From: Octopus sinensis
Taxonomy: Eukaryota
NCBI RefSeq assembly: GCF_006345805.1
Contig: NC_042997.1
Location: forward strand, 205,840,001 to 205,904,000
Reading direction: 5' to 3'
Length of the DNA: 64,000 nt
Position 1 is the stretch's first letter; every line of letters begins with the position of its first letter. The translations under genes and the position numbers were made by a program. The notes under the pieces are model-generated. The model had not been told where the DNA came from, did no database searches, and was given only the letters and a program-made list of their open reading frames with translations. Below are positions 14,120 to 58,482 of this stretch, piece after piece.

Positions 14120-15645
14120 GGCTTTTTGTATTAGTGTTCTTTCCTTCTGAAATAGGTATTTTTGCAGTCTTATGGTGGTTATTTTGTAATAGTTTTCTTT
14201 CCTTCTGAAATAGGTATTTTTGCAGTCTTATGGTGGTTATTTTGTAATAGTTTTCTTTCCTTCTGAAATAGGTATTTTGCAGTCTTATGGTGGTTATTTT
14301 GTAATAGTTTTCTTTCCTTCTGAAATAGGTATTTTTGCAGTCTTATGGTGGTTATTTTGTAATAGTTTTCTTTCCTCTGAAATAGGTATTTTTGCAGTCT
14401 TATGGTGGTATTTTGTAATAGTTTTTTTCCTTCTGAAATAGGTATTTTTGCAGTCTTATGGTGGTTATTTTGTAATAGTTTTCTTTCCTTCTGAAATAGG
14501 TATTTTTGCAGTCTTATGGTGGTTATTTTGTAATAGTTTTCTTTCCTTCTGAAATAGGTATTTTTGCAGTCTTATGGTGGTTATTTTGTAATAGTTTTCT
14601 TTCCTTCTGAAATAGGTATTTTTGCAGTCTTATGGTGGTTATTTTGTAATAGTTTTCTTTCCTTCTGAAATAGGTATTTTTGCAGTCTTATGGTGGTTAT
14701 TTTGTATTAGTGTTCTTTCCTTCTGAAATAGGTATTTTTGCAGTCTTATGGTGGTTATTTTGTAATAGTTTTCTTTCCTTCTGAAATAGGTATTTTTGCA
14801 GTCTTATGGTGGTTATTTTGTAATAGTTTTCTTTCCTTCTGAAATAGGTATTTTTGCAGTCTTATGGTGGTTATTTTGTAATAGTTTTCTTTCCTTCTGA
14901 AATAGGTATTTTTGCAGTCTTATGGTGGTTATTTTGTATTAGTGTTCTTTCCTTCTGAAATAGGTATTTTTGCAGTCTTATGGTGGTTATTTTGTAATAG
15001 TTTTCTTTCCTTCTGAAATAGGTATTTTTGCAGTCTTATGGTGGTTATTTTGTAATAGTTTTCTTTCTTCTGAAATAGGTATTTTGCAGTCTTATGGTGG
15101 TTATTTTGTAATAGTTTTCTTTCCTTCTGAAATAGGTATTTTTGCAGTCTTATGGTGGTATTTTGTATTAGTGTTCTTTCCTTCTGAAATAGGTATTTTT
15201 GCAGTCTTATGGTGGTTATTTTGTAATAGTTTTCTTTCCTTCTGAAATAGGTATTTTTGCAGTCTTATGGTGGTTATTTTGTAATAGTTTTCTTCCTTCT
15301 GAAATAGGTATTTTTGCAGTCTTATGGTGGTTATTTTGTAATAGTTTTCTTTCCTTCTGAAATAGGTATTTTTGCAGTCTTATGGTGGTTATTTTGTATT
15401 AGTTTTCTTTCCTTCTGAAATAGGTATTTTTGCAGTCTTATGGTGGTTATTTTGTATTAGTTTTCTTTCCTTCTGAAATAGGTATTTTTGCAGTCTTATG
15501 GTGGTTATTTTGTATTAGTTTTCTTTCCTTCTGAAATAGGTATTTTTGCAGTCTTATGGTGGTTATTTTGTAACAGTTTTCTTTCCTTCTGAAATAGGTA
15601 TTTTTGCAGTCTTATGGTGGTTATTTTGTAATAGTTTTCTACCAC
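14120..15645. repeat. 58-bp minisatellite, ~26 copies
   Basis: Unit ccttctgaaataggtatttttgcagtcttatggtggttattttgtaatagttttcttt; period 58 (14143 to 14201). Nearly identical copies and no spacers. Confidence 0.95.
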
Positions 15646-18230: not shown

Positions 18231-18439
18231 AGTATTTTTATTTATATGCGTATATATATATAAACAGAGAAAAATATTAAATTATTTTATTCCCGGGTAT
18301 CACAGAATTATTATCGAATTAGTGAATTTACAAAAGAAGTAAGAAAATATTTTGAGTTTACAATTTGAAATTTTCCAAAATATACATTCAGAAAAGTTTT
18401 ATAAACTGAGAAGATTCACAAAATAATTTTTCTTTCTCT

Positions 18440-18800
18440 TTGAACAAAGATTCATCACCCTTCTGTCTTGAGATTCCATCTGATGCCAGGCAGAATGCCT
18501 TTGCTGATCTTCAGAAAATCTCATCTCCCTTCAGTCTTAAGATACTATCTGATGTGCAGCCACATGCATTTCTTCTCTCTGGCAAAGTCACATCTCCCTT
18601 CTGTTTTGATACTGCATTAGTTTAATGGTAAATATGTAATTGTAAATCCCTTGTAACCTAGCAACTGGTGCAATAATTATTAAGTTGTAATTGAATGGTA
18701 AACGTATATTATCACATACCTTGGACTTGCCATCGAATTGTTTTTTGTCACGAGTTTCACCTTCAGGCATTCATTATATTGGTCAACGCATCTACACTGA
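18440..18800 (-). mobile_element. Short Helitron-like copy with 2-3 diverged 69-bp STPR-like units
   Basis: 18690-18790 is the reverse complement of 28610-28730 (ggtgaaactc.tgacaaaaaacaatt). 18440-18620 translates like the antisense of the 69-bp array (QNAFADLQKISSPF). Confidence 0.75.
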
Positions 18801-18864
18801 CACACCATTCTGCTGTGGTGGCCGTAAAGATGGAAAGTTGCCGATGAGTAATGTTGTTCACATT

Positions 18865-19260
18865 ACTCTTTTACTTGTTTCAGTCATTTGACTGCGGCCA
18901 TGCTGGAGCACCGCCTTTAATCGAGTAACTCGACCCCGGGACTTATTCTTTTGTAAGCCCAGTACTTATTCTATCGGTCTCTTTTTGCCGAACCGCTAAG
19001 TAACGGGGATATAAACACACCAGCATCGGTTATCAAGCAATGCTAGGGGGACAAACACAGACACACAAACACACACATACACATATATATATATATATAT
19101 ACGACGGGCTTCTTTCAGTTTCCAGCTACCAAATCCACTCACAAGGCTTTGGTTGGCCCGAGGCTATAGTAGAAGACACTTGCCCAAGGTGCCATGCAGT
19201 GGGACTGAACCTGGAACCATGTGGTTGGTAAACAAGCTACTTACCACACAGCCACTATTA
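18865..19260 (-). mobile_element. tRNA-derived SINE, full length
   Basis: Reverse complement of the 47959-48362 family, with an internal CA/TA microsatellite. Confidence 0.88.
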
Positions 19261-20729
19261 TTCATTTAGTTATCACAGTAGAATTAAAATTGAAAGAAAA
19301 CAAGTATAACAATTTCATATGACATTACAATATAGATGTTATTCTTTCACTTTTGACACATAATACCAAACCAGTGCCAATGTTATTTTGTTTTATCAAA
19401 ATGAAAAAAATTACATGCTGACACTCACAGGGTCTGATACTATTACCTTGTAGAAGTTGATTTGATTTGGTTGAGCTGTTTGAGAATGCATAGGGAACAG
19501 ACAGATAAACAGACAAAGAATGTTATATATATAGACAAGGAAGTCGATTTGTAAACAGAACTTACAAGCCCCATTTGAGCGTATATATCCTCTAGAAGAA
19601 AATAGCTTTTGCTACTTTAGGAGAGTTTTTTTCTAATGCATGACTGCTAAGTGGTACTGTTGAAATGTCATTAATTAGTAATAAAGGCTTCTCAGCTGTA
19701 TGTGGCCCATAGCAGTCATACTTGTGCCTGCATGACCACATGAACGTTTTCTGACAGAGGGAGAAATGTGAATAGTGTATTTAAATAGACAGAGTTCAAA
19801 AAGCTTAAAATAAGGAAAGTAATGTTGTAGGGAGAATGTACAAATACTGTAAAGATAAAGATATTTACACACAACAAAATTGAAATGCACTGAAGTCAAT
19901 TTTTGGCAGATGTGGCAAAACTGAATTTAAACGCACTGGGTAAACAAAAATTAAAGATAAGTAAGCTATTTTCCAGGGAGAACGCACAAAAACCATAACA
20001 ACAGAGATTTTTACATATGACTAATTGAAATACATGGAAGGCAATTTGTAGACAGAAGTTAGTGTGTGAGTGAGTTAAAGAGAGGGAGAGAGAGTGAAAG
20101 AAAAAGACATAGAAAAGAGAGGAACTATTACAGAGGGTGAGAGAGAATATGTGTAAGCAAGAGAAACAGAGAATGAGAAAAAAGAGGGAAGAGAGAAATA
20201 AACAGAGAGAGAACCAGTTGAAAACTGCAGAAGCTTTTAGAGAGATTCGTGTAAAACACCATTTTCCCCCTGTTTCTCTCTTTACACAGGAGCTCTGGGC
20301 GAAATGTTATAGTGCATGACCATCCTTGGCGCATAAGTAATGTGTGTGTAAAGTTTGGTGGAAGTCTATTTCACTGGCTAATTGTTGTATAGAGTGTGTC
20401 TTGTGTTTGTATATTAGTTTGTTTAGGTTGTATTATAGAATCGATAGTATGTTGCATAGGATGTGGGCTGTTCCTTGCAGGGCTATTTTTTGAAAAGTAC
20501 GTAGTGTTCAGGACCCAGTTATTATTATTGTTATTATTATTATTCTATGTTTGGCTTTTGCTTTGCTTTTCTACAAGTTGACTCACCCAGAAACCTTAAG
20601 AGACAACAATTTTGAAGTTCATGCTGGTGTTATAACTAGTGTGCCATATTTTTGGTTTTGCACAGAGAATTGTTCTTGAGAATGTCTAAGAAAACACAAG
20701 AAAATTATGAGTTTGTTTTAAAAATATAT

Positions 20730-25020: not shown

Positions 25021-25739
25021 TAGTTGAAATTTACAGGAGGTAGGAGGTATTGTTAGCAGCGTTGTAAGCATAAGCATTATGGTCATTGAATGATGTAGAT
25101 TTAAGCGGTGTAGCAGAAATATGGATATTCCAGGGGCGGGGTGTCAGCTGAAAGCTGGTCTAGTTTGTCCAAATAGATGGGCTTGCAGGTATAATGGCGG
25201 GTACCACCAGCGGGGAAGGGTTCAGACAAAGAGAAAGGAAACAAGCACAAATGCACACAGAAACAAGCATGCACAGACAGCCAAATAGCTTTTACATTTA
25301 CTTCCCAAGGCCAAGGAAATGGGTAGTTGTTGGCATATTTCTAAACAACGAAAATGGAATTAAATATAGCCGAACCTGGTTGCACTTGTCACAGTAGAGA
25401 GATAGAGAAAGAGAGGGAGAGAGGTAGAGAAGGAGGAGAGAGATAGAGAGAGGGGGGCAGGTAGAGAAAGAGAGGGAGAGAGATAGAGAAAGAGAGAGTG
25501 CAGGTAATATAGAGAACAACACCATTCGGGAGGAGGAGTTGGCAGAAACGATAATTGCTTACAACGCTGTTAACACTAGCTCCTACCTCCAGTAAGGGCA
25601 GCAATCAAACATGCTTGAATGTTTTCAGGTCGAAAGGGAGATCAACGAAACATGCCTAAATGACGAACACCACAACAACCCTCTTCTTTTCAGGCACTAA
25701 ATAACATCCCTCCTCCCCAAACCTCACTCCACATTACCT

Positions 25740-28028
25740 TCCCAGTTTTCAGAGTTGGCACTGTCAGTGTTGGCACACTGAAAGGTAGATCTAGTGAGAT
25801 TGTAGAGATGCTTGAAAGGAGATGGGTTGATGTATGCTGCATACAAGAGGTAAGATGGAGAGGGGCTTCAGCTAGGGTTCTCACAGGCAAGGCACATAGG
25901 TATAAGGTCTTCTGGCAAGGTAACATGGATGGTGTAGGGGATGTTGGCATACTCCTTGAAGAGAAATGGGTGGAAAAGGTCATAGAGGTTGTCAGGGTAT
26001 GCGATAGAGTGCTTAAGATCAGGCTAGCCCTACAGAACAGCACAGCAACAATTATCTCTGCCTACACCCGACATGCGGGGTTACCAAATGATCAGAAGGA
26101 CCACTTTTATGAAACCCTTCTACAGGCTACCTCAAAGATGAGTGGAAATGACCTCATCTTTGTGGCTAGATACTTTAATGGGCATGTTAGGCAGGTATCT
26201 GGAATCTTCACTGGGGTACACGAAGCTACTGGAATTCTGTGATGCATGTAACCTTTTAATCTGCAACACTAACTTCAGGAAGCCAGACTGCCACCTGATA
26301 ACCTATCAGTCAGGAGATTCCGCTAGCCAAATAGACTTCATCCTCACCAGATAGCAGGATGCAGGGTCGCTCTTAAATACAAAGACCCTCCCGGGTGAAG
26401 AATGTATCCCTCAGCATAGGCTAATCATTAGTGACTTTAAGCTTGAAGCCAGAAGGACTCCAAGAAACAGACCAATCCAGAAAAGAAGGATTTGGAAGCT
26501 AAAGAACCCTTCACATGGTCAGAGATTTAGGGACATCCTCATCAAGAAATTTGATGAGAGGGAGGAGGAGCTTCAGACGTCGGACATAGAAAGTAGCTAG
26601 GAATTCCTACGGGACAGCTTGCTGAGTGCCACTGACCAAGTCTGCAGATGGTGCAAAGTCCCTTCCAGACCCAGAGTTACGTGGTGGTGGAATAGAACGG
26701 TAGACAAAGCCATTAGAGCAAAAAAACAGGCCTGGAAAGCCTGGAAGGATGTGGGTAGCAGGGAACTGTACCACGTAGCCAAAAGGGAGGCTGGGAGGCA
26801 GGTGTACGTGGCCAAGGGAGAAGTGGAAAAGAAGAAGTTTGCCAAAGTATTTCGGATTGCAAGAGAGTGTGTGAGAGAAAATTGTGATGTCACAGGAAAG
26901 AAATGTGTTCGAATGGATGATGGTGCACTTGCTTTTAGTGATTCTGAAAAGAAAGAGGCTTGGAGAAGCCATTATGAGAGACTGCTGAATATGGAGAATG
27001 AATGGGAGGAGGAAAGCCTGCCAAATGTTGACCCAGTAGAGGGACCAGATATCCCAATAGACAGTGTCTTGGTAGATAAAGCAATTAAGGGTATGAAGCC
27101 AGGAAAAGCCCCTACCTGATCAGGAATCACTGCTAAGATGCTTAAAATATCTGGTGGTGTGGGCTATGGCCTAGTCACCCACATTGTAAACCAGGTAGTT
27201 CATAACGGAGTCATACCCAATGACTGGCATAGCAGCACCATAGTCTACTGCTACAAGGGTAAAGGTGATGCTCTAGACAGAAATAACTACAGAGGAATCA
27301 AACTGCTGGATCAGGTGATGAAGGTGATAGAGGGGATCATAGCCCATCTCATTAGGGTGAGAGTCTGCTTAGATGAGATACAGTTCGGTTTTGTTCCAGG
27401 CAGAAGCACCACTGATGCCATATTCCTGGTTCGACAACTGCAGGAGAAATACCTAGCCAAAGATAAACCCCTATACTTAGCCTTTGTGGACTTGGAGAAA
27501 GCCTTTGACAGGGTCCCCCGATCCCTTATCTGGTGGGTGATGTGGAAACTGGAGATAGACAAATGGTTAATAAGGGCTGTACAGGCCCTAAACAGAGATG
27601 CTGTTAGTAAGGTTAGGGTTGGCAATGAGTATAGTGAAGAATTCTGGGTAGAAGTAGGGGTCCACCAAGGTTCAGCCCTCAGTCCCCTTTTATTCATCAT
27701 AGTCCTCCAGACAATAACAGAGGAATTCAAGAGGGGTTGCCCCTGAGAGCTCCTCTATGCTGATGACCTAGCCCTTGTAGCAGAATCACTACTGGAACTA
27801 GAGAAGAAATTTCGTGTGTGGAAGCTTGGTTTAGAATCAAAAGGCCTTAGAGTCAATGTAGCAAAGACCAAAGTTCTAGCAAGTAGGAAGGTGAACACAT
27901 CACACACCCCTTCAGGTAGGTGGCCCTGCTTGATCTGTAGAAAAGGTGTGGGTAGAAACTCCTTAAGATGTACCCAGTGTAAGCTATGGACACATAAGAG
28001 GTGCAGCAATATCAAAGGAAGGTTAATA
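25740..28028 (+). mobile_element. RTE-clade LINE, endonuclease + RT, 3'-truncated, pseudogenised
   Basis: APE motif DVCCIQEVRW. RT motifs YRGIKLL, QFGFVPGRSTTDAIF, FVDLEKAFDRVPR, GVHQGSALSPLLF and YADDL. Cys-rich WPCLICRKGVG..CTQCKLWTHKRCS. Stops and frameshifts present. Confidence 0.93.
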
Positions 28029-28130
28029 GAAGAAGAAGAAGAAGAAGAAGAAGAAGAAGAAGAAGAAGAAGAAGAAGAAGAAGAAGAAGAAGAAGAAGAA
28101 GAAGAAGAAGAAGAAGAAGAAGAAGAAGAA
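28029..28130 (+). repeat. Pure (GAA)34 microsatellite
   Basis: Uninterrupted gaa tract at the point where the RTE is cut off. Confidence 0.95.
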
Positions 28131-28599
28131 GATTTTATGTTGGGTTTTCTTATATTTAGTCTAATTTCATTAATTTCATATCCTGTGCCATTTTTTCCCT
28201 GATCCTCTTTCATTTGATTTAGATTTTTAAATGTTATTCTTTTGGCATGTCTGAATGTTTCTGACGTTTTCAGATGGATATCTGTATGCGTCTGTTTTCT
28301 GAAGAACTGAAGCAGCACATAGTATTTTGTCTTACTCATTTTGCGGCAAACAAAACATTTACCATAGAGCCTCTGTGGCAGAGTAACCCAGTTTGTAATC
28401 ATACGAGAAAATCACTCAACATAGTTTGGTTGTTATCATTTTCATAAGGTCTGTGGGTACAAATTTTGTATACCAATATTGTTGGGAAAGAAAAAGAGTC
28501 AAAATTAAATGCAACGTATACATAATTGATTTTTTAAATGACTGAAATAATAAGTAATTAAAAATGAGACGTTTCATGTGAAACAACCTAATACGTATG

Positions 28600-31500
28600 T
28601 GACGAGAACGGCTGGAGGTGAAACTCTTGACAAAAAACAATTAGGTGGCATGTCCAGGATATATAAAAATACACATCTACCATTCAATTAACAGTTCAGA
28701 ATTATTGCAGCAGATGCAGGGTATTTACAATTTGCTCGTATTTGGTTAATTTACACCACATAAAAACATATTGACATACTATAAATATACAACTGCTTAC
28801 AAAAACAGAGATTAATGTATATTTTTTTTCTATGTACAAAATTTTTTGTTTCTAATATTAAAAAAAAATATACCCCCAAAGAAAAAATCATAACCTCTCC
28901 AGAAACACCTACAAAGCAAGGGGGAGTGCAGAAAACTGAAGGCGAGTGTCTCAAGAGATAAGCAACATGAGATATTCTCAAGATTAGCAAAGGCATGCTG
29001 CAGTACATCAGATGGAGTCTCAAGAGGGAAGAAGGGACATGACACTTTCCAAAGAACACCAAACGCATGCTGCAACACATCATATAGGACCTCAAGAGAG
29101 AAGGGAGATGAGACTTTCTGAAGATCAGCAAAGGCATTCTGCTGGACATCTGATGGAGTCTCAAGACAGAAAGGAGATGAGACTTTCCCAAGATCAACAA
29201 AGGCATTCTGCTGGACATCAGATGGAGTCTCAAGACAGAAAGGAGATGAGACTTTCTGAAGATCAGCAAAGGCATTCTGCTGGACATCAGATGGAGTCTC
29301 AAGACAGAAAGGAGATGAGACTTTCCCAAGATCAACAAAGGCATTCTGCTGGACATCAGATGGAGTCTCAAGACAGAAAGGAGATGAGACTTTCTGAAGA
29401 TCAGCAAAGGCATTCTGCTGGACATCAGATGGAGTCTCAAGACAGAAAGGAGATGAGACTTTCCCAAGATCAGCAGAGGCATTCTGCTGGACATCAGATG
29501 GAGTCTCAAGACAGAAAGGAGATGAGACTTTCTGAAGATCAGCAATGGCATTCTGCTGGACATCAGATGGAGTCTCAAGACAGAAAGGAGATGAGACTTT
29601 CCCAAGATCAACAAAGGCATTCTGCTGGACATCAGATGGAGTCTCAAGACAGAAAGGAGATGAGACTTTCTGAAGATCAGCAAAGGCATTCTGCTGGACA
29701 TCAGATGGAGTCTCAAGACAGAAAGGAGATGAGACTTTCTGAAGATCAGCAATGGCATTCTGCTGGACATCAGATGGAGTCTCAAGACAGAAAGGAGATG
29801 AGACTTTCCCAAGATCAGCAAAGGCATTCTGCTGGACATCAGATGGAGTCTCAAGACAGAAAGGAGATGAGACTTTCTGAAGATCAGCAAAGGCATTCTG
29901 CTGGACATCAGATGGAGTCTCAAGACAGAAAGGAGATGAGACTTTCCCAAGATCAGCAGAGGCATTCTGCTGGACATCAGATGGAGTCTCAAGACAGAAA
30001 GGAGATGAGACTTTCCCAAGATCAGCAGAGGCATTCTGCTGGACATCAGATGGAGTCTCAAGACAGAAAGGAGATGAGACTTTCCCAAGATCAGCAAAGG
30101 CATTCTGCTGGACATCAGATGGAGTCTCAAGACAGAAAGGAGATGAGACTTACCCAAGATCAACAAAGGCATTCTGCTGGACATCAGATGGAGTCTCAAG
30201 ACAGAAAGGAGATGAGACTTTCCCAAGATCAGCAGAGGCATTCTGCTGGACATCAGATGGAGTCTCAAGACAGAAAGGAGATGAGACTTTCCCAAGATCA
30301 GCAGAGGCATTCTGCTGGACATCAGATGGAGTCTCAAGACAGAAAGGAGATGAGACTTTCCCAAGATCAGCAAAGGCATTCTGCTGGACATCAGATGGAG
30401 TCTCAAGACAGAAAGGAGATGAGACTTTCCCAAGATCAGCAGAGGCATTCTGCTGGACATCAGATGGAGTCTCAAGACAGAAAGGAGATGAGACTTTCCC
30501 AAGATCAGCAGAGGCATTCTGCTGGACATCAGATGGAGTCTCAAGACAGAAAGGAGATGAGACTTTCCCAAGATCAGCAGAGGCATTCTGCTGGACATCA
30601 GATGGAGTCTCAAGACAGAAAGGAGATGAGACTTTCCAAGATCAGCAAAGGCATTCTGCTGGACATCAGATGGAGTCTCAAGACAGAAAGGAGATGAGAC
30701 TTTCTGAAGATCAGCAAAGGTATTCTGCTGGACATCAGATGGAGTCTCAAGACAGAAAGGAGATGAGACTTTCCAAGATCAGCAAAGGCATTCTGCTGGA
30801 CATCAGATGGAGTCTCAAGACAGAAAGGAGATGAGACTTTCTGAAGATCAGCAAAGGCATTCTGCTGGACATCAGATGGAGTCTCAAGACAGAAAGGAGA
30901 TGAGACTTTCTGAAGATTAGCAAAGGCATTCTGCTGGACATCAGATGGAGTCTCAAGACAGAAAGGAGATGAGACTTTCCCAAGATCAGCAAAGGCATTC
31001 TGCTGGACATCAGATGGAGTCTCAAGACAGAAAGGAGATGAGACTTTCCCAAGATCAGCAAAGGCATTCTGCTGGACATCAGATGGAGTCTCAAGACAGA
31101 AAGGAGATGAGACTTTCCCAAGATCAGCAAAGGCATTCTGCTGGACATCAGATGGAGTCTCAAGACAGAAAGGAGATGAGACTTTCCCAAGATCAGCAAA
31201 GGCATTCTGCTGGACATCAGATGGAGTCTCAAGACAGAAAGGAGATGAGACTTTCTGAAGATCAGCAAAGGCATTCTGCTGGACATCAGATGGAGTCTCA
31301 AGACAGAAAGGAGATGAGACTTTCCCAAGATCAGCAAAGGCATTCTGCTGGACATCAGATGGAGTCTCAAGACAGAAAGGAGATGAGACTTTCTGAAGAT
31401 CAGCAAAGGCATTCTGCTGGACATCAGATGGAGTCTCAAGACAGAAAGGAGATGAGACTTTCTGAAGATCAGCAAAGGCATTCTGCTGGACATCAGATGG

Positions 31501-33829
31501 AGTCTCAAGACAGAAAGGAGATGAGACTTTCTGAAGATCAGCAAAGGCATTCTGCTGGACATCAGATGGAGTCTCAAGACAGAAAGGAGATGAGACTTTC
31601 CCAAGATCAGCAAAGGCATTCTGCTGGACATCAGATGGAGTCTCAAGACAGAAAGGAGATGAGACTTTCTGAAGATCAGCAAAGGCATTCTGCTGGACAT
31701 CAGATGGAGTCTCAAGACAGAAAGGAGATGAGACTTTCTGAAGATCAGCAAAGGCATTCTGCTGGACATCAGATGGAGTCTCAAGACAGAAAGGAGATGA
31801 GACTTTCCCAAGATCAACAAAGGCATTCTGCTGGACATCAGATGGAGTCTCAAGACAGAAAGGAGATGAGACTTTCCCAAGATCAACAAAGGCATTCTGC
31901 TGGACATCAGATGGAGTCTCAAGACAGAAAGGAGATGAGACTTTCTGAAGATCAGCAAAGGCATTCTGCTGGACATCAGATGGAGTCTCAAGACAGAAAG
32001 GAGATGAGACTTTCTGAAGATCAGCAAAGGCATTCTGCTGGACATCAGATGGAGTCTCAAGACAGAAAGGAGATGAGACTTTCCCAAGATCACAAAGGCA
32101 TTCTGCTGGACATCAGATGGAGTCTCAAGACAGAAAGGAGATGAGACTTTCTGAAGATCAGCAAAGGCATTCTGCTGGACATCAGATGGAGTCTCAAGAC
32201 AGAAAGGAGATGAGACTTTCCCAAGATCAACAAAGGCATTCTGCTGGACATCAGATGGAGTCTCAAGACAGAAAGGAGATGAGACTTTCTGAAGATCAGC
32301 AATGGCATTCTGCTGGACATCAGATGGAGTCTCAAGACAGAAAGGAGATGAGACTTTCCCAAGATCAACAAAGGCCTTCTGCTGGACATCAGATGGAGTC
32401 TCAAGACAGAAAGGAGATGAGACTTTCTGAAGATCAGCAAAGGCATTCTGCTGGACATCAGATGGAGTCTCAAGACAGAAAGGAGATGAGACTTTCCCAA
32501 GATCAACAAAGGCATTCTGCTGGACATCAGATGGAGTCTCAAGACAGAAAGGAGATGAGACTTTCTGAAGATCAGCAAAGGCATTCTGCTGGACATCAGA
32601 TGGAGTCTCAAGACAGAAAGGAGATGAGACTTTCTGAAGATCAGCAAAGGCATTCTGCTGGACATCAGATGGAGTCTCAAGACAGAAAGGAGATGAGACT
32701 TTCCCAAGATCAACAAAGGCATTCTGCTGGACATCAGATGGAGTCTCAAGACAGAAAGGAGATGAGACTTTCCCAAGATCAGCAAAGGCATTCTGCTGGA
32801 CATCAGATGGAGTCTCAAGACAGAAAGGAGATGAGACTTTCCCAAGATCAACAAAGGCATTCTGCTGGACATCAGATGGAGTCTCAAGACAGAAAGGAGA
32901 TGAGACTTTCTGAAGATCAGCAAAGGCATTCTGCTGGACATCAGATGGAGTCTCAAGACAGAAAGGAGATGAGACTTTCTGAAGATCAACAAAGGCATTC
33001 TGCTGGACATCAGATGGAGTCTCAAGACAGAAAGGAGATGAGACTTTCCCAAGATCAACAAAGGCATTCTGCTGGACATCAGATGGAGTCTCAAGACAGA
33101 AAGGAGATGAGACTTTCTGAAGATCAACAAAGGCATTCTGCTGGACATCAGATGGAGTCTCAAGACAGAAAGGAGATGAGACTTTCCCAAGATCAACAAA
33201 GGCATTCTGCTGGAGTCTCAAGACAGAAAGGAGATGAGACTTTCCCAAGATCAGCAAAGGCATTCTGCTGGACATCAGATGGAGTCTCAAGACAGAAAGG
33301 AGATGAGACTTTCCCAAGATCAGCAAAGGCATTCTGCTGGACATCAGATGGAGTCTCAAGACAGAAAGGAGATGAGACTTTCCCAAGATCAACAAAGGCA
33401 TTCTGCTGGACATCAGATGGAGTCTCAAGACAGAAAGAAGATGAGACTTTCTGAAGATCAGCAAAGGCATGCAGCTGCAGCACTTAATGCTGAATCATTA
33501 AAACGTTTAGCTCACCAGATTACACAGAGGTTCAATAGAATAGCTCTCAGAATCAGGTCACATACAAATTCGTTCTTCACAACACCTGGAGCTTCTTTCA
33601 GATATGATCCATCGCATTCTTATAAAAATGATAATTCTGTCCAAATCGGTGACCTTTCTTGTCATCTGTGCATATATTCTTGTCATTTGTGCAAAGCTTT
33701 AACATCTACTCCACAAATGCTTCATGGTCAATGCTTCACTTTCCCACATCACCTGTTTCAACATAACTGCAATATATATGTACAAACTATGCCATTATAA
33801 TCTTGAGCAATGCCAGGCATCTCTGCTAG
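28600..33829 (+). mobile_element. Non-autonomous Helitron derivative (5' end not defined)
   Basis: The STPR-like array reads into ASFRYDPSHSYKNDNSVQIGDLSC..C, which resembles a Helitron RepHel N-terminus. Ends with a degenerate hairpin (gagcaatgccagg) and CTAG|T at 33826-33830. Confidence 0.72.
28940..33470 (+). repeat. 69-bp coding-type tandem array, ~64 homogeneous copies, 23-aa unit ESQDRKEMRLSQDQQRHSAGHQM (STPR-like)
   Basis: Period 69 bp = 23 codons. Plus-strand ORFs of 561, 399, 445 and 188 aa are separated by three 1-nt deletions, one 11-nt deletion and one TAG. E1, S2, R9 and L10 match the STPR pattern. Confidence 0.92.
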
Positions 33830-34759
33830 TAAGTAATAATATTACTTGAAAATAGTTTTACATTCATTGAGCACATTCAACTTTTCTCATTTTGAATATT
33901 TTTTGAAAAGATTAGCACCAAGACACTCGTCTTGATGAGTTCTATCATATGAGCTAAATGAAAACAAAATTTTTACACAAAATCTAAATGCTTAGGTTTT
34001 GAATTTGCTTTTAGGCATTATCACTGTTTTCGGCACATTTGGCCCCAATAGTATTTTATTTAAATTTCTTATATATATAATTAGCATCATAGGATTCCTG
34101 TAGTCAAGAAAAGTTGAATTTAAATATAGTTTTCTTTTGAAAGAAGAATATTTGGAGTCAAAGTCGATTTCAGTTATTAATCTAAATCTACTGAATATTT
34201 TTGCATATAACTAACATAGATAGATTCCTCTCACCAAAATCTATCATACAAGTTAAAATAAAATATAGATTTCTTAAAAAGAAAAATATTTGGTCACAAA
34301 GTCGATTTCAGGCGTTATTCTCCTGTTTTTGACCTCACATATTTAACTCAAACTTTTCTTCTACCAAAGCAATTTTCAAGTTTTATAACCGAAAATGTAG
34401 CTTAGGATAAGATCAATTTAAAAATGTAAACATCATCTAATTTGGTTAAAAACTGAGTTTGTTATAAAACCTAAAATTAGTTGCAAGTGAGTAAATGTTG
34501 ACCTTAAGAATATTATTCACTTACCATGTGTGAATGATAAATTTATAACATACACAACATATATATGCGCATACATATGTAACATATATTTCACATACAT
34601 ACATTCATACATACATTCATACATACATATATAAATACATTCATATATGCCTACATACAGACATAACATACATATATAAATTCATAACATACTAGCATAC
34701 CTACATACACACATACATAACATACATACATACGTAATTGTATATGTACATGATGATGG

Positions 34760-34796
<37 letters not shown>

Positions 34797-35877
34797 GATG
34801 ATGATGGCCATCCACTCGTGACCGAGGAAAACCATTCCTGATCTTTAGGAACATTGTGTGCATGAAGCTACCTTGTACTTTACACTTGCAGATCTGTTAG
34901 TGACTAACGAGTCCTGTTCTTAACAAACATACAGGACCGCAAACATTGCAGACCAAGTTTTTCCCATTTATTTTCAAGCAGCATGCTTAGATTCTTTATG
35001 AAAAGTATGTACGTACATATATACATATACAAGCATACATACATACATATATACACACATACATATATACATACAAGGTTTCTCAAAACCAGACAGGAGA
35101 AAGCTAATTCCAAGACTACATATCCAGTCCATCACTGAAACTGTAAAAGTCTGTAAAACTTTCCAGAAGTTTATCATTTAAATATATATGAGCATGTCTA
35201 GATATGTAACTATATGCATGAGAATTCATACATAAAATAAAACATACAAATATGCACATACATACATATATACAGACACAACAACCAAAACTACCCTGTT
35301 GTTGATGTTGAAATTCCAATAAAGGAACCTTGGATTTAGGTTAGAAACTGGTTCTTTCTCCATTGGTAAGAAATCTTGAAATAAACTGAATTATGATATA
35401 CATACATACATGATGGTCATCCACTTGTGACCGAGAAAGGCCATTGCAGAAAAAGAAAGGAAAAAGAGAAGAAAAACTGCCTTCTGTTGTTAAATGCTTT
35501 TAAAGAAGAAGAGAGAAAAAAAGAACTGTCTTATTAGATGGTTATTTTTTTTAAAAAAGATTTACTTTGACCATATGCAACGGTTTTGTTTTGTTGTAGG
35601 TGGCTTTTCTGGCTTCTTCACTGATTCTTCTTCTATTCTGAACAGTTTGATTTGCTAAGCGTTTTGCACATGAGGTTTACTGAACCAGCAAAACTTTTCC
35701 ATTGAACTCTCAGACATGTCTTGCAAGTTCATAATTTAACTTTTACACACCCACGTCAAACTCTACTGCTTAATTCTAAGAGGCCAGATAACATCGGATT
35801 GTTGAAACGGTTATTGGCATTAATGATATGGTCGAAAGGAATTACCAACTAGACGAAATTTGTGTTATAACAAATGA

Positions 35878-36429: not shown

Positions 36430-36560
36430 AGGTCTTTTGCTCTGGTAACCTCTGCTTTCTCCCATGTTCACACACAACCAGCTATATATCGCTATAAGTA
36501 GAGCAACGGATTCAGCTAATTTGGAAATTAGTTGTAGAGAAACGGAGAAAATATCGTTTA
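36430..36560 (+). mobile_element. PIF1/Helitron helicase C-terminal motif remnant
   Basis: PMFTHNQLYIAISRATDS resembles PVFSHGQLYVALSR. Confidence 0.6.
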
Positions 36561-36576
36561 TATTGTGTATATATAT

Positions 36577-37668
36577 TGTTACGGAATCACCCGTCGTCGC
36601 CCGTCCCGAACGGCTCACACAAGTTCCGCCACGGAACCCAAAGAGGCGGAGAGAGGAGATACAGATAGATACTGCCACAACCTCAACAGCACAGAGATAC
36701 AGAGGCACAACCCGAGATACAACCCAAAGAGGCAAGGCAACAACTGGCAACACTGGCTTATATTCAAACAACAGTTTATACGACAATTACAATTGTTACA
36801 ACATCAAGATACATCAAAGCATGCACGTGACTACTCAATACATAATACAACAGCATTTCAAGAGTACAACTCAAAGCATAATACAACATCATGTAACAAT
36901 TCAAGAGTACACGTCCCAAGACAACAGTTCTTTAAAGTCTCTTCCTAAACATCACAATCAACAAGTCCTTTACTCTTCTTCTTCACAATGTCCTTTATCG
37001 ACCACATCGACAGAGTCCTTGACTGTTCTTTTTCTCTTACTGTTCAATACACCGTGACATATATCAATGCACAAACACATACCTCAATTCCTAATTGAAT
37101 CTGCCAGTGTCCCATTCCTCTCAATACTGCTAATTCCTCTGAATACTGCTAATTCCCTTCTGTGCCGCCAAGCTTTCTCGCATCCAACTTGCTCCTAAGA
37201 ATTCCAACGCTTGCTCCTTAAATCCAAGATCCATCTGTCTTCTTCGAGGACCGGCCAGCGACTGCCAGATCCGTCTGTGTTCTTCGACGACCGCTCAACG
37301 ACTGCCCAGAACCTCACTTCCTTGTCCTGACTTCCACTCCCTCATCTCCCTCTGTTCTACCACCTATAGTCTTTCTATTTGCTATCTGATTCCTTACTCT
37401 CTCTATATCGCCTCAATCTTTTACCCTCTCCATCTGTCCCTTTAGCCTTATACTCTATCTCTATTTGCTCTCACCCCTTAATCTGTCTTCCTCTTTACTT
37501 CTTCAAGGGGTGCTCAGAATGACCTCCAATCGACCGCACAAGGTCAGAAAGGTCCCTCCAAAACCCATTAGTCTTCCGTGAACAAAAGACTGTCACTTTT
37601 CTACTAGACATGCCGGAACCATAATTCCAATGTGGGTCACCGGGAAATGCACCAGCTAAACCGTAACA
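36577..37668. mobile_element. Solo LTR-like element in a (TA)n tract
   Basis: Termini TGTTACGG...CCGTAACA (8-bp inverted), flanked by ATAT on both sides; no retroelement ORF. Confidence 0.7.
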
Positions 37669-37729: not shown

Positions 37730-40560
37730 TGATTGATTGATTGATTGATTGATTCTAGTTTCAGCTTATGAGCTGTGGCCATGCTGGGGCACCGCCATTT
37801 GGTGTTGCTACTTGGTTTCACTTCATGGAGGCTTTCTAGCAACTGCTATTTGGTGCATGAGAGAGTTCGATGCAGCTGCCCTCATCTGCCCCTCCTGCCG
37901 TGAAGTTGGTTCATCTGGGACACCTGACAAGAAGAGATCCAGCTTCATTTTAAAGACATTTGTATCCACCCCATGCAGGTCTCTCAGGTTCTTCGGGAGG
38001 ATATTGAAGAGCTGTGGGCCTCGGAAGCCCAGGCTATCACAGAATCTTGTCCTACATCTTGATGGCAGGTTTGGAGTCCTAGGCACCACGCAGTGGCGCC
38101 CAGTTCTGGCATTTGAATAACTCTCGATGCCAAAGTTCAGGACACTTCCCTCCAGGATATTCCATATGTATATTATGGCATATCTTTCCCGCCTACACTC
38201 CAGGGAATATAATTTTAATCTCTTGAGTCTTTCTCAGTAGCTTACATTCTGCATAGAGGCTATCTTCTTTGTGTAGCTTCGTTGGATCGCCTCAAGTTCT
38301 GTGATCAACTTGACACTGGATGGTGACCATAGCTGAGAGCAATAGTCAAAGTGGCTTAGGACAAGTGTCTTCCAGAGGACCATCATGGTTTCTTGTTCTC
38401 TTGTTCTAAAGGTTCTAAGAATCCATCCAGCCAGCCGTCTACATTTCATTGTCAGTTTAGCAACATGTACATGAAAGGTCGCGTCATCACTCATGTGAAT
38501 ACCCAGGTCACGCACTGATTGTGCCTCTGGGATTGCAATCCCTCCGGGTCCAGTGTATTCATTGGGTATTGCATTCAGTTTTGCATGCTGATAGTATAAA
38601 GCTTGAAACTTTCCAGCATTGAACTGCATGCTATTCTTTTCAGCCCACTTGTATATTTCGTCCAGCTCACATTGCAGGTGTTTAGTGTCCTCAGGGTTCT
38701 GTATTGCCTGTGAAACTTTTGTATCATCTGCATAACTTGTGATCGTGGCTCTCTGCGTGCTGAGGGCATGTCTGAGAGGGCCATTATGAACAGTAGTGGT
38801 CCCAGAACAGTGCCCTGCGGAACACCGCTCACTATTTGTGTGTTAATGGAGGTGGCCCCATTGGCTACTACCACCTGACTTCTATCCTTCAGAAAGTCAT
38901 GAAGCCATTCTCCCAGTTTTCCAACTATGTTGAGATCACACAGTTTGTGACATATCATTCCATGATCGACTTTATCAAAGGCCTTTGCAAAGTCGAGATA
39001 TATCACTTCCACATTTGAGTGGTTGAGCAGCCGTTTCAGCACCCAGTCATAGTGTTGTAGGAGCTGAGTTAAATAGCTTCTCCCTGGTCGGAAACCATGT
39101 TGGGTGTCGGGCAGCAAGTCATTCTCTTCAAGGAAGGTGATCAGCTTCCTTCTGACTATTCGTTCCATGACCTTGCTGATGTGTGAGGTCAGAGAGATAG
39201 GTCTATAGTTCTTGGCTTCCGCTCTGCTACCTCCTTTATGAATGGGGCATATTTTACCTTCCTTCAGTTTTCCTGGAAGTTTGCCAGCTGCAAGGAAGCT
39301 CTGAAAGAGGAACTGCAGTGGTCTTGCTAGGACTCTCTTACATGCTTTTAGGAGGATTGCCGGGAATCCATCGGGGCCAGTAGCTGAGTCTGTTTTCATT
39401 TCATCTATAGCCTTGGTTACATCGTCTTCCTTTATATCGATGTAATCTATCGTCGCCGCCTCTGATTTTATATCTGCAGTGGTAAAAAAGTCTGTTGGAT
39501 TGGTGATTTGGAGATGCCCAAGGGGTGGAGTGAAAACACTCTTGAATTGCTCATTCAGTATTTCACTTACCCTCATTGGTTTTCCTGTAAGTGTGCCATC
39601 CTTTTCGAGGAGTGGCCCTATTCTACAGTGCACTGTAGCTGTTTCTTTGGCATACCTGTAGAAAGCTCTGGGGTTAGATTTTATGTTTTCTATAGCCCAG
39701 GCTTCTTTGTCTGCTCTTTCTTTTTCATGGGAGAGTTGCAGACATTTTTCGATTTCCAACAGTTTTATTTTTAGGCGGGACTTTTCACTGCTTTCAATCT
39801 GTTTGTTTAGGCGATTTGAAAATTTCGTACGCCGTCTCATTAAAATTTTCCTCTCTCTGGGGATTTTGTTCTTGTGTACAGTGGCCTTTCTCTCTGGGAC
39901 ACATTTGTAGCATATGGCTTGCATTACAGACATGAATTGTTGAAGTTTCACGTCGATGTCTGGCGAGGAGAGACATTTAGGCCAGTTTTGTTTGAGGATC
40001 TCTTTCTCAATTTGTTTCCAGTTTGCCTTATGGTAGTTCAAGCTGAAAGATTTTGAGGGTTTCTTGTAGGCTGCATGTCCGTGCTCTCTTTTGGCCCATA
40101 CATGGTCAGCTCTATCATGTTGTGATCCGAGAGTAGTGTCGGTGTCACTTTCACATTATGGATGAGATCCATGTCATTTGTGAAGCAGAGATCCAGTGTG
40201 TTACCTGCCCTGGTTGGTTGGAGTATTACCTGCTCCATGTACAGGGTGTTGATGAGGTTCAGGAGGGACCTTGCCTGTCCTCATTCACATCTTGTCATTC
40301 CTGGGAGAGAAAGGCCCTCGGGCCATCTGACATTGGGCAGATTGAAGTCTCCCATAAGAAGCACACCTATGTGTTGTTCTAATGTGGTTAGAATTTCTTC
40401 TATTTTTATAAGGCAGTCTTCAAACTTGCCCACATGGCTTGGGGCATCTGGAGGGCGATATGTAGCACACACAACTACATCAAGTTGCCTAATATGTACA
40501 ATTAGTGTGTCACACACCGAGTTTGAGTATGACAAGAGGACCTGGGGGATAAGAGGACAA
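37727..40560 (-). mobile_element. CR1/L2-like LINE, 5'-truncated ORF2
   Basis: 488-aa ORF with NYRPISLTS, QHGFRPGRS, YLDFAKAFDKVDHG and GVPQGTVLGPLLF. Downstream frames give QFNAGKF, VRDLGI and DYCSQLWSP. (AATC)n 3' tail at 37727-37752. Confidence 0.93.
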
Positions 40561-41399: not shown

Positions 41400-42046
41400 A
41401 TGTCTAGTGAAGCCATAGTAAACTGGTACAATTACTTTCAAGATATCTGTGCCATGAGGTGCATTCAAAATCTCATGCATATTGGAGGGGTTGTGGTGGA
41501 GATTGATGAATCCAAATTTATGCACAGGAAGTACCACAATGGCCAATATTGGATTGGTCACTGGGTTGTAGGAATGGTTGAATACCACAGTCTGAGATGT
41601 ATTTTAGTTCCTGTACCAGACAGAAGTGCTGCCACATTGCTACCCATAATTGATAGCCATGTCCTTCCAGGAACTAGGTTGGCAAGCTTACAACCAGCTC
41701 CAAAACCATTCTACAGTCAATCACAGTTTCAATTTCGTAGACCCAAACGACGCTTCAGTTCATTTATCAAAAACAAATACTGCAACAGGCACGGAATTTC
41801 TGATGCTCTATTTTCAACATATCTTCAGGAGTTTTGTTGGCGACATTACCACAGCTCAAATACTGGCGATTCATTGGTTAAAATTCGAAGAATTAAACTA
41901 CGTTAAACTTACAAATTACAAATTTATCAAAAAACCCAAGTGAAAATAATGTTTTCTTTTGACACATTCTACCAGTATACGAAGTTTCAAATTGTTTAGT
42001 TAACTAGAAATTGTGTTGAAAACTGCCGTTCAAAAGGAAAAGATCC
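41400..42046 (+). mobile_element. Merlin/IS1595-like transposase pseudogene with right terminal repeat
   Basis: VVEIDESKFMHRKY..HWVVGMVE..VPDRSAATLLPII..VLPGT, then shifted WQAYNQL..VNHSFNFVDP. 41960-42046 matches the MITE TIR ending in agatcc. Confidence 0.88.
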
Positions 42047-44110: not shown

Positions 44111-45022
44111 TAATCCTACATTGTAACAACCGTAATAATATTCTAGTACATATAAATCGCAGTACGTGTGTGTATAATGACTAACGCATTCATTAATACT
44201 TTTGTTTACCTACCAATGTGTAAGAATTAGCACTTCCTTCTCAAAGCTTGGATTCGAAATCAGATCCAAGAATCATTGGTCGTAAAATACCAATGCACAA
44301 AAAGGCGCGAAATCAGAATCTCTTTGTTCTGACAAAAAATGATGGATCGTCTCCCTTCGACCTCTGACCCGAGCAGGTCAGGCGAAGTTTAACAGGACGA
44401 CCAGCGACCTACTGTACGCAATAACACTCTTGCGGTATATCTATTTTTCTGGCTATTTGAGATGTTATAAATAGAACGGAGAAATAGGTATCTAGAGAGA
44501 ACCCGAACCAACGTTTAAGAGAACGTCACGCATTTATGAGGACGACGAAAGAATAATCAGAAAGGTGACTCTGTACTGCATGATTTACACACACGCACAC
44601 ACACACACCATCAAACATATTCTGCTTTAATGTGTATCCTGTATTATGCATTCCTTTAATATGTATTATTTGCAACCACTATTTAATATGCATTTTGTAC
44701 AAGCGATGTGTAACATTGCTTACAAATTGATGTAGTGATAATAAATCTTTAATTTATTACAAAGCACTTATGTATTTATTAATACATCCACGCATCCACT
44801 ACAGCATTGTTTCACTTGAGGGATGCTTATTTACCCCTCCATTATGATATTTCGACTATTGTCCATTGTTGCAAATACGTTTTAGCATTGAGGTTCTAGC
44901 CTTTTTTAAACAATCACATATGATTCGTCCCAAAGAATCAACCTTTAAATAAGACTTTTACTACCACTAGCGAAAGTTATACATAAATTTCAGAAAGCTC
45001 CATACCAATTTCCTGCACACTG

Positions 45023-45640
45023 TTGAAAAGAGGTGCCCCTGCTAGAGCTACAACTATTCCAGGGCAGCTTGAAACATATACAGTGTGTGCTGCTGAAGCA
45101 AGGGCCATAGAAGCCTCAGAAGAGAGTGCTATTTGTCAGGCACATAATGCTGCATCCACTTCTGCCGCAAGGTTAACAGATGACAGTAACCATTGGATGA
45201 TGAGACTTCATTCTAATATTCACCAAAAGGCTCTTGTCCATGGCCTTTGGAAGCCATCGAGGTATCGGTGGGCATAAAAGGCACTGAACTGTGATCCTGC
45301 TGCGGATTACACCATTCATTGAGGGACTGTTACAGGGAATATGTCTGTAATATGCTGCTCAAACGGAAAGGTTCGCCTGACCTGCAAAACACTACTCAGC
45401 CTTTCCTCTCCTTGGTCAAGACCCTGATTCACAGCAATTTCTATAGGAAATTCACGCTTATAACTCCAGATGACAAGTTTTGGTCCCAAATCAATTCATG
45501 AAGGCTCATATATGCCAACATTCAAAATTCAGGGCCAATCCTATCATCGGATAGGCTCTATTCCTCCTGCCAACAACACTGAACACCGATTCCTTCAAAT
45601 TTACTTCATGGGAGATATCACTGAGCAAATGGCTCGCTGA
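45023..45640 (+). mobile_element. Helitron RepHel N-terminal fragment
   Basis: ICCSNGKVRL and QMTSFGP..YMPTFKIQGQSYHRIGSI..FLQIYFMGD. A single STPR-like unit (RAIEASEESAIC) lies upstream. Confidence 0.82.

Positions 45641-58445: not shown

Positions 58446-58451
<6 letters not shown>
57672..58451. repeat. Cassette with ~120-bp inverted repeats
   Basis: 57672-57793 is the reverse complement of 58334-58451; ~540 bp spacer without a recognisable ORF. Confidence 0.85.

Positions 58452-58482
<31 letters not shown>

What the first reader, a model, noticed from the sequence alone, without database searches (positions are those of the whole stretch)
28940..33829. Helitron-borne STPR-like 23-aa repeat expanded to ~64 copies inside the gene's first intron
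Seen: the 69-bp unit gives ESQDRKEMRLSQDQQRHSAGHQM, and the last frame (33234-33800) runs into a Helitron-like FRYDP..SVQIG..C segment followed by a hairpin and CTAG end. Repairing three 1-nt deletions, one 11-nt deletion and one TAG would give an ORF of roughly 1,600 aa. Several recurrent variants are synonymous (CAA/CAG) or conservative (Q/E). Known: STPR is a 23-residue DNA-binding repeat found in four copies in Bombyx FMBP-1. Inferred: an extreme expansion of a DNA-binding repeat array, either a young coding minisatellite or a domesticated protein.
Basis: partly seen in the sequence, partly recalled or inferred. Interest (0 to 1): 0.72.

Follow-up and report, generated by a model that had tools for sequence, protein, structure and literature searches.

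The report
Dead Helitron repeat turned minisatellite
A 69-base stretch that once coded for a DNA-binding repeat (STPR) at the start of a Helitron transposon gene has been copied about 65 times in a row inside a broken leftover of that transposon, and it now looks like an ordinary, non-coding minisatellite rather than a gene.

Summary
There is a 69-bp tandem array at 28,967-33,477 (65.5 copies), with the unit peptide, three 1-nt deletions, one 11-nt deletion and one TAG exactly as described.

The unit is an STPR-type repeat of Helitron origin:
- The last ORF matches N-termini of Helitron-like proteins (E=2e-23).
- A profile of those relatives matches both the Helraiser transposase (E=9e-16) and the Bombyx FMBP-1 STPR domain (E=3e-5).

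Relatives carry 1-6 units. Three related DNA copies carry 2, 2.5 and 6-7 units, and the units in the 6-7-unit copy are diverged from each other. Here, 62 units are nearly identical.

The array is not a live gene:
- The ancestral ATG reads ATA, and the first unit has two stops.
- There are five frame-breaking lesions.
- Helitron homology ends at about 33,730, and no Rep or helicase domain adjoins.
- Four of the six frames of the unit are stop-free anyway.
- Variants fit neutrality.
- No long-array protein exists in 5.8 billion clusters.

Two more minisatellites lie in the same window, which is dense in transposon remains and probably comes from an octopod. The "hairpin + CTAG" end is not supported, and the "first intron" claim is untestable here.

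Verdict: a recent minisatellite expansion seeded by coding repeats of a dead Helitron fragment. Modest interest.

The parts
28600..28870 (+). 5' non-coding part of the Helitron-derived fragment, upstream of the old ORF
   Evidence: 28,606-28,717 is 80% identical to 18,772-18,661 on the other strand. It aligns with L001 and L003 from Logan assemblies. The boundary is approximate and no terminus could be recognised.
28871..28873 (+). Former start codon, now ATA
   Evidence: The window reads ATA CCC CCA AAG where L001 reads ATG CCA CCA AAG. Relatives start MPPKK / MPRKRK.
28943..29152 (+). Three old, diverged edge units: a degenerate unit with TAA and TAG, a 72-nt unit, and a unit starting ATAG
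   Evidence: The units at 29,012-29,152 align with the units of the inverted copy at 18.5 kb.
29153..33416 (+). 62 homogenised 69-bp units, the expanded minisatellite core. Lesions: 1-nt deletions in units 30,602-30,669, 30,739-30,806 and 32,049-32,116; TAG at 30,918-30,920; 11-nt deletion in unit 33,152-33,209.
   Evidence: There are four main unit types (18, 11, 11 and 8 copies) in runs and alternations.
33417..33485 (+). Last unit, diverged (MESQDRKKMRLSEDQQRHAAAAL), the transition to unique sequence
   Evidence: It aligns with the last STPR unit of relatives.
33486..33730 (+). Remnant of the Helitron N-terminal domain after the repeats (F.YDP...Y.ND..QIG.L...C..C.A), with an in-frame 21-bp direct duplication (33,656-33,672 / 33,677-33,693)
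   Evidence: phmmer E=2e-23 to P0001 over query residues 2-160. See the alignment. hhalign to the relatives-only profile gives 99.2%. The profile matches Helraiser residues 14-235. Homology to L001 fades at about 33,730.
33731..33829 (+). Sequence with no detectable relative.
   Evidence: Sequence. There is no match elsewhere in the window or to L001. Relatives continue here with GE.PGMCC.GGK, which the window lacks.
18430..19537 (-). Second, inverted 5' fragment of the same family, with about 2.5 units and then truncated. It shows the unexpanded state.
   Evidence: tblastn, ORF MRFSEDQQRHSAWHQMESQDRRVM, alignment, units at 18,617-18,446, and L003 22-280 matching 19,537-19,279.

Best explanation
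The array is a recently expanded, non-functional minisatellite. Its 69-bp unit is one (or two adjacent) of the 23-residue STPR DNA-binding repeats encoded at the N-terminus of a Helitron transposase.

An old Helitron fragment carried a few diverged 69-bp coding repeats. The fragment consisted of the 5' region, the start of the ORF, the STPR repeats and the first ~80 residues after them. It lacked the Rep and helicase parts. Because head-to-tail copies were already present, replication slippage or unequal exchange could change their number. One or two inner units were amplified to about 62 near-identical copies. The outer units were left old and diverged.

Since then the array has picked up neutral point changes, frameshifts and a stop. 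It is not expected to make a working protein. Its effect on the host is at most that of any 4.5-kb minisatellite.

Shown: the homology, the copy-number contrast, the decay of the flanks, and the neutral variant spectrum. Inferred: the slippage or unequal-exchange mechanism, and the order of events.
For: Origin:
- The tail ORF hits 24 proteins, the best at E=2e-23. They carry 23-aa ES.E.R..RL..DQ.RH repeats followed by F.YDP..QIG..C..C.A..GE.PGMCC.GGK. P0011 carries Helitron_like_N and PIF1, and P0016 carries PIF1.
- PF21107 STPRs is above its cut-off in P0002, P0005, P0008, P0020 and P0022.
- The relatives-only profile matches the window at 99.2% probability, E=3e-19. It matches Helraiser 7lcc at E=8.7e-16 and FMBP-1 STPR 5d23 at E=3.1e-5.
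- A unit HMM built from relatives only scores the window unit at 22.7 bits. Shuffles score 0.8+-3.1, and 0 of 2000 reach it. The other open frames score about 0.

Expansion:
- Relatives have 1-6 units.
- L001 has 2 units and the 18.5-kb copy has 2.5. L003 has 6-7 units at strict 69-bp spacing that are only 50-66% alike.
- Here, 62 units differ at 9 positions only.

Decay:
- ATG has become ATA, and the first unit carries stops.
- There are five lesions in the array.
- Homology ends at about 33,730, while L001 and L003 go on into the CC.GGK motif.
- tblastn with a full RepHel relative finds nothing beside the array.

Neutrality:
- 3 of 9 point events are synonymous, against 17% expected (P=0.20). 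0 of 5 rare events are synonymous.
- 4 of 6 frames of the unit are stop-free, and the minus strand holds ORFs of 907 and 620 aa.

Context:
- Two more minisatellites lie in the window.
- Helitron-carried tandem arrays are known in molluscs (PMC7492417).
Against: - No reads, transcripts or population data were available. Expression, the true copy number and the reality of the three 1-nt deletions are therefore unknown; two of those deletions lie in a CCC run.
- Every unit starts with ATG, so long ORFs (561, 399 and 445 aa) remain. A peptide product cannot be excluded.
- All internal variants cluster in unit positions 34-53 (P about 0.003-0.03). A plain neutral model does not predict this.
- The element's true ends were not found.
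Confidence: 0.8

Rival explanations
1. The array is, or very recently was, a coding minisatellite. It would be a live or domesticated gene making a protein with dozens of STPR helices that tracks along DNA.
For: - The historical coding frame is still mostly open (ORFs of 561, 399, 445 and 188 aa).
- The unit keeps Glu1, Ser2, Arg9 and Leu10, which PMC4856987 names as conserved STPR residues.
- The common variants are synonymous or Q/E.
- Two of the three 1-nt deletions lie in a homopolymer and could be sequencing errors.
Against: - The start codon is lost, and the first unit has TAA and TAG.
- The TAG and the 11-nt deletion are not homopolymer-type errors.
- The tail is truncated and ends in a stop, with no further domain.
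- The rare variants are all non-synonymous, nonsense or frameshift.
- 4 of 6 frames are open by construction.
- No protein of 310-980 aa resembling the array exists in 5.8 billion clusters. No hit in 1.84 billion representatives has more than 3 matched stretches.
- The unit has lost the basic residue at position 20/21 and has a net charge of about 0.
Confidence: 0.04
2. The array is the internal cargo of a dispersed non-autonomous Helitron family. As in oyster Helentrons that carry satellite-like repeats, many copies with variable arrays would exist across the genome, spread by transposition.
For: - Helitron/Helentron non-autonomous elements carrying tandem arrays are documented in molluscs (PMC7492417).
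- The fragment keeps a 5' region and a short tail, as an internally deleted element would.
- The same family occurs twice in this window and in Logan contigs.
Against: - The three other copies examined (18.5 kb, L001, L003) are unexpanded; L004-L006 were fetched but not analysed.
- No terminus was recognisable. The proposed 3' hairpin is a 4-5 bp palindrome.
- The exact unit was not found in the metagenome collection.
- The host genome itself could not be searched.
Confidence: 0.12
3. The copy number and some of the lesions are artefacts of long-read assembly or polishing of a repetitive stretch. The real array would be shorter, longer or cleaner.
For: - Near-identical 69-bp units over 4.5 kb are hard to assemble.
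- Two deletions lie in a CCC run.
- Variants cluster oddly in unit positions 34-53.
Against: - The ordered map of unit types, with runs and alternations and distinct edge units, looks like a real minisatellite variant map.
- Even a different copy number would not change what the array is.
- The TAG, the 11-nt deletion, the lost ATG and the truncated tail are not typical polishing errors.
Confidence: 0.1

Closest known systems
STPR domain (Pfam PF21107) of Bombyx mori FMBP-1 (PDB 5d23/5d2q/5d2s)
   Same: - Strict 23-residue period.
- Glu1, Ser/Thr2, Arg9 and Leu10 are kept.
- A profile of the window's relatives aligns in register with the four FMBP-1 repeats (E=3e-5).
   Different: - FMBP-1 and nearly all described STPR proteins have 3-7 repeats (PMC4856987); this array has about 65.
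- The window's own ORFs do not reach PF21107.
- The unit is not basic (Gly20/His21 where others have Arg).
- The array is broken and not part of a protein.
N-terminal region of Helitron (HLE1) transposases, e.g. Helraiser (PDB 7lcc), and STPRs reported in HLE1 elements by HELIANO (PMC11417382)
   Same: The order of parts is the same: short basic N-terminus, STPR-type repeats, then F.YDP...QIG...C..C.A. HELIANO lists STPRs as a domain found almost exclusively in HLE1.
   Different: Only the first ~170 residue-equivalents survive here. The CC.GGK motif, the Rep (HUH) and the PIF1 helicase are absent next to the array. No TC...CTRR termini could be shown.
Satellite-like tandem arrays carried by non-autonomous Helentrons/Helitrons in oysters and Drosophila (PMC7492417, PMC8268682)
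   Same: A tandem array sits inside a rolling-circle-transposon remnant in a mollusc genome.
   Different: In those cases the repeats are non-coding internal modules present in many dispersed copies. Here the unit comes from the transposase's own coding repeat, and the three other copies examined are unexpanded.
Classical minisatellites (10-100 bp units, variant-repeat interspersion)
   Same: - Unit size of 69 bp, head-to-tail order and 95-100% identity.
- Older, diverged edge units.
- Runs and alternations of unit types.
- Two other minisatellites lie in the same window.
   Different: The unit length is a multiple of three, and its origin as a protein repeat can be traced.

Membership tests
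STPR repeat (PF21107) | Tandem repeats of exactly 23 residues | tested here: met
   69-bp period over 65.5 copies. Units of relatives and of L003 have the same spacing.
STPR repeat (PF21107) | Conserved Glu1, Thr/Ser2 and Arg9 (PMC4856987), and DNA-contact residues Arg6, Leu10, Tyr16 and Arg20 | tested here: inconclusive
   The unit E1 S2 ... K6 ... R9 L10 ... R16 ... G20 H21 keeps Glu1, Ser2, Arg9 and Leu10 and has Lys at 6. It lacks the basic residue at 20/21.
STPR repeat (PF21107) | Match to the Pfam model above its gathering score | tested here: not met
   There is no PF21107 hit for the window ORFs even at E<=10. The test is met only by relatives: P0002 36.0, P0005 30.4, P0008 30.6, P0020 27.2 and P0022 38.0 bits, against a cut-off of 27.
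STPR repeat (PF21107) | Homology to the solved FMBP-1 STPR domain | tested here: met
   The test is transitive. The relatives-only profile A5 matches the window tail at 99.2% and 5d23_A at E=3.1e-5. Direct phmmer of the window ORF against the PDB finds nothing.
STPR repeat (PF21107) | Binds DNA along the major groove | not testable with these tools
   This needs a binding assay. It is also moot if no protein is made.
Helitron (HLE1) element | N-terminal region of the RepHel protein | tested here: met
   phmmer E=2e-23. The profile matches Helraiser residues 14-235 at E=8.7e-16.
Helitron (HLE1) element | Rep (HUH) endonuclease and PIF1-like helicase domains | tested here: not met
   tblastn with P0011 (Helitron_like_N + PIF1) and all other hits finds only the repeats and tail here. 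A 44-aa scrap at 36,449-36,580 gives UvrD_C_2 at E=0.023 only.
Helitron (HLE1) element | 5'-TC ... CTRR-3' ends with a 3' hairpin, inserted between A and T | tested here: inconclusive
   CTAG|T at 33,826-33,830 is preceded by a 4-5 bp palindrome. It is not shared with any other copy. The 5' limit of similarity (about 28,600) shows no TC terminus.
Minisatellite | Head-to-tail array of 10-100 bp units with high identity, interspersed variant units and diverged edge units | tested here: met
Functional protein-coding gene | Start codon, uninterrupted frame, purifying selection and homologous full-length proteins | tested here: not met
   ATA in place of ATG, five lesions, a neutral variant spectrum, and no long-array protein in two very large protein searches.

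The most novel reading that the evidence does not exclude
An intact allele or sister copy of this array may exist in the species and encode a protein with tens of STPR helices. STPR helices each cover 4 bp and bind (ATAC)n best in vitro (PMC4856987). Such a protein could coat long (ACAT)n microsatellites, which abound in this window. Alternatively, the STPR module could guide this Helitron family to such tracts.
Probability: 0.04. Interest if true: 0.65.

Novelty: new member of a known kind. Interest (0 to 1): 0.3.

Why it matters
It is a clean, traceable example of how a tandem array is born. A protein's own internal repeat supplied the head-to-tail copies that slippage needs, and after the gene died one unit grew to 4.5 kb. 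That is a useful teaching case for the origin of transposon-derived minisatellites. It is also a warning for annotation: long ORFs and 'synonymous' variants in a 3n-periodic array are not evidence of coding. It also confirms independently that STPR repeats are a regular N-terminal module of one Helitron lineage, reaching into cephalopod-like genomes. It does not open a new biological question unless the array proves to be expressed.

Tried and rejected
- Pfam on the array ORFs of both strands at E<=10 gave no STPR hit, only chance hits (LacZ_4, Carm_PH).
- The word-indexed protein search found nothing for the tail ORF or for the 561-aa array ORF.
- An exact-pattern scan of metagenome contigs for half a unit gave 0 hits.
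- Direct phmmer of the tail ORF against the PDB gave only a chance hit at E=1.1.
- The ORF start at 36,464 (FTHNQLYIAISRATDSANLEI) looked to me like a PIF1 helicase C-terminus. There was no PDB hit and only UvrD_C_2 at E=0.023. It is kept as a passing note and is not part of the feature.
- The 45-kb Helitron N-terminal remnant was considered as a continuation of this ORF. It was rejected because it overlaps the same protein region (P0002 residues 67-271) and shares no DNA similarity, so it is a separate element.
- The 'hairpin + CTAG' as a Helitron 3' end has no second copy and no homology, and the stem is too short.
- A selection test on unit variants has too few independent events (9), and the split is neutral.
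- A search for host exons turned up only transposon-type Pfam domains among the roughly 25 window ORFs scanned (the 130-aa-and-longer ORFs outside the array, plus one of 128 aa). The 95-130 aa ORFs were only looked over as translations.
- The run accession of the related contigs was not found in the paper library.
Full report
**Observation.** Tandem Repeats Finder reports a 69-bp array at 28,967-33,477 with 65.5 copies and 95% matches. Splitting the array at the unit start gives 64 units from 29,012, plus a degenerate unit at 28,943-29,011. The consensus unit reads MESQDRKEMRLSQDQQRHSAGHQ.

- 68-nt units at 30,602, 30,739 and 32,049;
- a 58-nt unit at 33,152;
- a TAG at 30,918-30,920.

The last frame (33,234-33,800) runs into ...SFRYDPSHSYKNDNSVQIGDLSC....

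**What the unit is.** The window's ORFs do not hit any Pfam family, including STPRs, even at E<=10. An exhaustive phmmer search of 1.84 billion representative proteins with the 188-aa tail ORF gave 24 hits (best E=2.3e-23 and 5.1e-16).

These hits are N-terminal pieces of Helitron-like proteins. They have a short basic start (MPPKK...), three to six 23-residue repeats of the type E-[ST]-x-E-x-R-x-x-R-L-x-x-D-Q-x-R-H, and then F.YDP...Y.ND..QIG.L...C..C.A.KF.GE.PGMCC.GGK. One hit (P0011, 1,655 aa) carries Helitron_like_N and PIF1. Another (P0016) carries PIF1, and one is named 'ATP-dependent DNA helicase' in a spider.

Five relatives pass the Pfam gathering score for PF21107 STPRs, and eight more score below it.

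A profile built from eleven relatives only (A5) gives three matches:
- the window tail, at 99.2% probability (E=3e-19, 143 columns, repeats in register);
- the resurrected Helitron transposase Helraiser (7lcc, E=8.7e-16, residues 14-235);
- the crystallised STPR domain of Bombyx FMBP-1 (5d23, E=3.1e-5).

A single-unit HMM built only from relatives' units scores the window unit at 22.7 bits. Shuffles of the unit score 0.8+-3.1, with a maximum of 15.8, and none of 2000 reaches it. The other stop-free frames of the DNA unit score about 0.

The unit is therefore an STPR-type repeat of Helitron origin, and MESQ... is the frame in which it once coded. HELIANO's survey lists STPRs among the domains found almost only in HLE1 Helitrons (PMC11417382).

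**How unusual the copy number is.** The relatives carry 1-6 units, with a median of 3. The structural paper on FMBP-1 states that most STPR domains have four repeats and a few have three or five to seven (PMC4856987).

Three DNA copies of the same family show the unexpanded state:
- L001 (a Logan contig, about 72% identical in both flanks) has 2 units.
- An inverted fragment in this window (18,430-19,537, minus strand) has 2.5 units before it is truncated.
- L003 has 6-7 units at strict 69-bp spacing, but they are only 50-66% identical to each other.

In the window, by contrast, 62 inner units differ at only nine positions. The outer units (28,943-29,152 and 33,417-33,485) are old and diverged, and they align with the units of the inverted copy. 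This is the pattern of a recent amplification of one or two inner units of a pre-existing short repeat.

**Why it is not a live gene.**
1. The ancestral start codon, ATG in L001 and matching the MPPK start of relatives, reads ATA at 28,871.
2. The first unit has TAA and TAG.
3. Five lesions break the frame inside the array. Even if the three 1-nt deletions were sequencing errors, the TAG and the 11-nt deletion remain.
4. After C..C.A the homology fades at about 33,730. L001, L003 and all protein relatives continue into the CC.GGK motif, whereas the window ends in a stop at 33,798. A 21-bp direct duplication also sits at 33,656-33,693.
5. tblastn with all recovered relatives finds no Rep or helicase sequence beside the array.
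6. Four of the six frames of the consensus unit are stop-free, and the minus strand carries ORFs of 907 and 620 aa. ORF length therefore says nothing here.
7. There are nine independent point events: three synonymous, five non-synonymous and one nonsense. With 17% synonymous expected, P=0.20. The five rare events include no synonymous change.
8. The common 'synonymous/conservative' variants are the ones that separate unit types. The E-type is shared with the adjacent old unit and with the 18.5-kb copy. They are best read as inherited from founder units that diverged while the sequence still coded.
9. No protein of 310-980 aa resembling the array was found among 5.8 billion clusters. No hit in the exhaustive search shows more than three matched stretches.

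**Mechanism.**
- Shown: the homology, the short ancestral state, the near-identity of inner units against old edges, and the interspersion map of unit types. That map is HIBABADEBAECADDCJDDCDDDFKFALCCCCACAAACAABBAAMABENABAABCBAGBGOPCBQ, with runs, alternations and a duplicated two-unit block carrying the same 1-nt deletion.
- Inferred: replication slippage or unequal exchange between the pre-existing head-to-tail units. This may be helped by an inverted repeat inside each unit (GAGTCTC / GAGACT). Two units fold as DNA at -23.9 kcal/mol, z=-2.9.

The same window holds two more minisatellites, 115 bp x 11 and 58 bp x 26, so such expansions are common in this genome region. The surroundings are a transposon graveyard: two LINE reverse transcriptases, a LINE endonuclease, a Penelope-type GIY-YIG, an IS1595-like DDE, and another Helitron remnant. 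The best named relatives of one LINE come from Argonauta hians, so an octopod origin is likely. That is an inference.

- The 'hairpin and CTAG end' is a 4-5 bp palindrome (33,810-33,820) five bases before CTAG (33,826-33,829). It lies in about 100 bp that match no other copy, so it cannot be accepted as a Helitron terminus. The 5' limit of similarity (about 28,600) shows no TC end either.
- Whether the locus lies in a host gene's first intron cannot be told. No host exon was recognised.

**Comparison with the known, and novelty.** Tandem arrays inside rolling-circle transposon remnants are known, notably in oysters (PMC7492417). Minisatellites derived from transposons are also common. What is particular here is that the seed was the transposase's own protein repeat, and that the resulting number of STPR-coding units is about ten times that of any STPR protein seen. 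I file it as a new member of a known kind (transposon-derived minisatellite), with modest interest.

**Unexplained.** All point variants and both kinds of 1-nt deletion among the 62 inner units lie in unit positions 34-53, while positions 1-33 and 54-69 never vary. By simulation P=0.0035 for the seven rare events, or 0.026 with the 11-nt deletion included. Founder effects plus chance, a local mutational hot stretch, and polishing errors could not be separated.

Noticed in passing
window 29153-33416, unit positions 34-53: Every point variant and both kinds of 1-nt deletion among the 62 inner units fall in a 20-nt arc of the 69-nt unit. The other 49 positions never vary (P about 0.003-0.03 by simulation). 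The cause is unknown.
   Followed up: partly
window 520-1782 and 14124-15640: Two further minisatellites lie here: 115 bp x 11 (96% matches) and 58 bp x 26 (97%). Kilobase-scale tandem expansions are common in this region.
   Followed up: no
window 18430-19537 (-): An inverted 5' fragment of the same Helitron family with about 2.5 diverged units, then truncated. Its upstream part (19,279-19,537) matches L003 22-280, a stretch that the main copy lacks.
   Followed up: partly
window 45017-45640 (+): An N-terminal remnant of a different Helitron family (tblastn to P0001 residues 168-275 at E=1.5e-18 and to P0002 residues 67-271). It includes ...PTFKIQGQSYHRIGS...FLQIYFMGD and shares no DNA similarity with the main copy.
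   Followed up: partly
window 36449-36580 (+): The piece PLLSPMFTHNQLYIAISRATDSANLEI resembles the last helicase motif of PIF1/UvrD-type helicases (UvrD_C_2 E=0.023, below threshold; no PDB hit). It may be a scrap of a Helitron helicase. It is followed by a C/A-rich stretch of unknown nature up to about 37,060.
   Followed up: partly
window 34593-34733, 35010-35075, 58417-58654: These are (ACAT)n/(TACA)n microsatellites. They belong to the same 4-bp repeat class as (ATAC)n, the best in-vitro ligand of the Bombyx STPR domain (PMC4856987). A link between STPR-bearing Helitrons and such tracts is pure speculation here.
   Followed up: no
window 25664-28132 (+): A LINE remnant lies directly upstream of the feature. 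It has a reverse transcriptase, a PHD-like zinc finger and an (AGA)35 tail (28,028-28,132).
   Followed up: partly
window 38234-40155 (-): A LINE reverse transcriptase whose best named relatives are Argonauta hians proteins (57-59% identity). This suggests the window comes from an octopod cephalopod.
   Followed up: partly
window 12263-12670 (-), 41400-41906 (+), 54084-54677 (+): Further transposon remnants: a GIY-YIG domain (Penelope-type), an IS1595-like DDE transposase piece, and a LINE endonuclease piece.
   Followed up: no
window 33656-33693: An in-frame 21-bp direct duplication (TTCTTGTCATCTGTGCA / TTCTTGTCATTTGTGCA) doubles the C..C motif of the Helitron N-terminal domain. It is absent from L001 and from all protein relatives.
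   Followed up: yes
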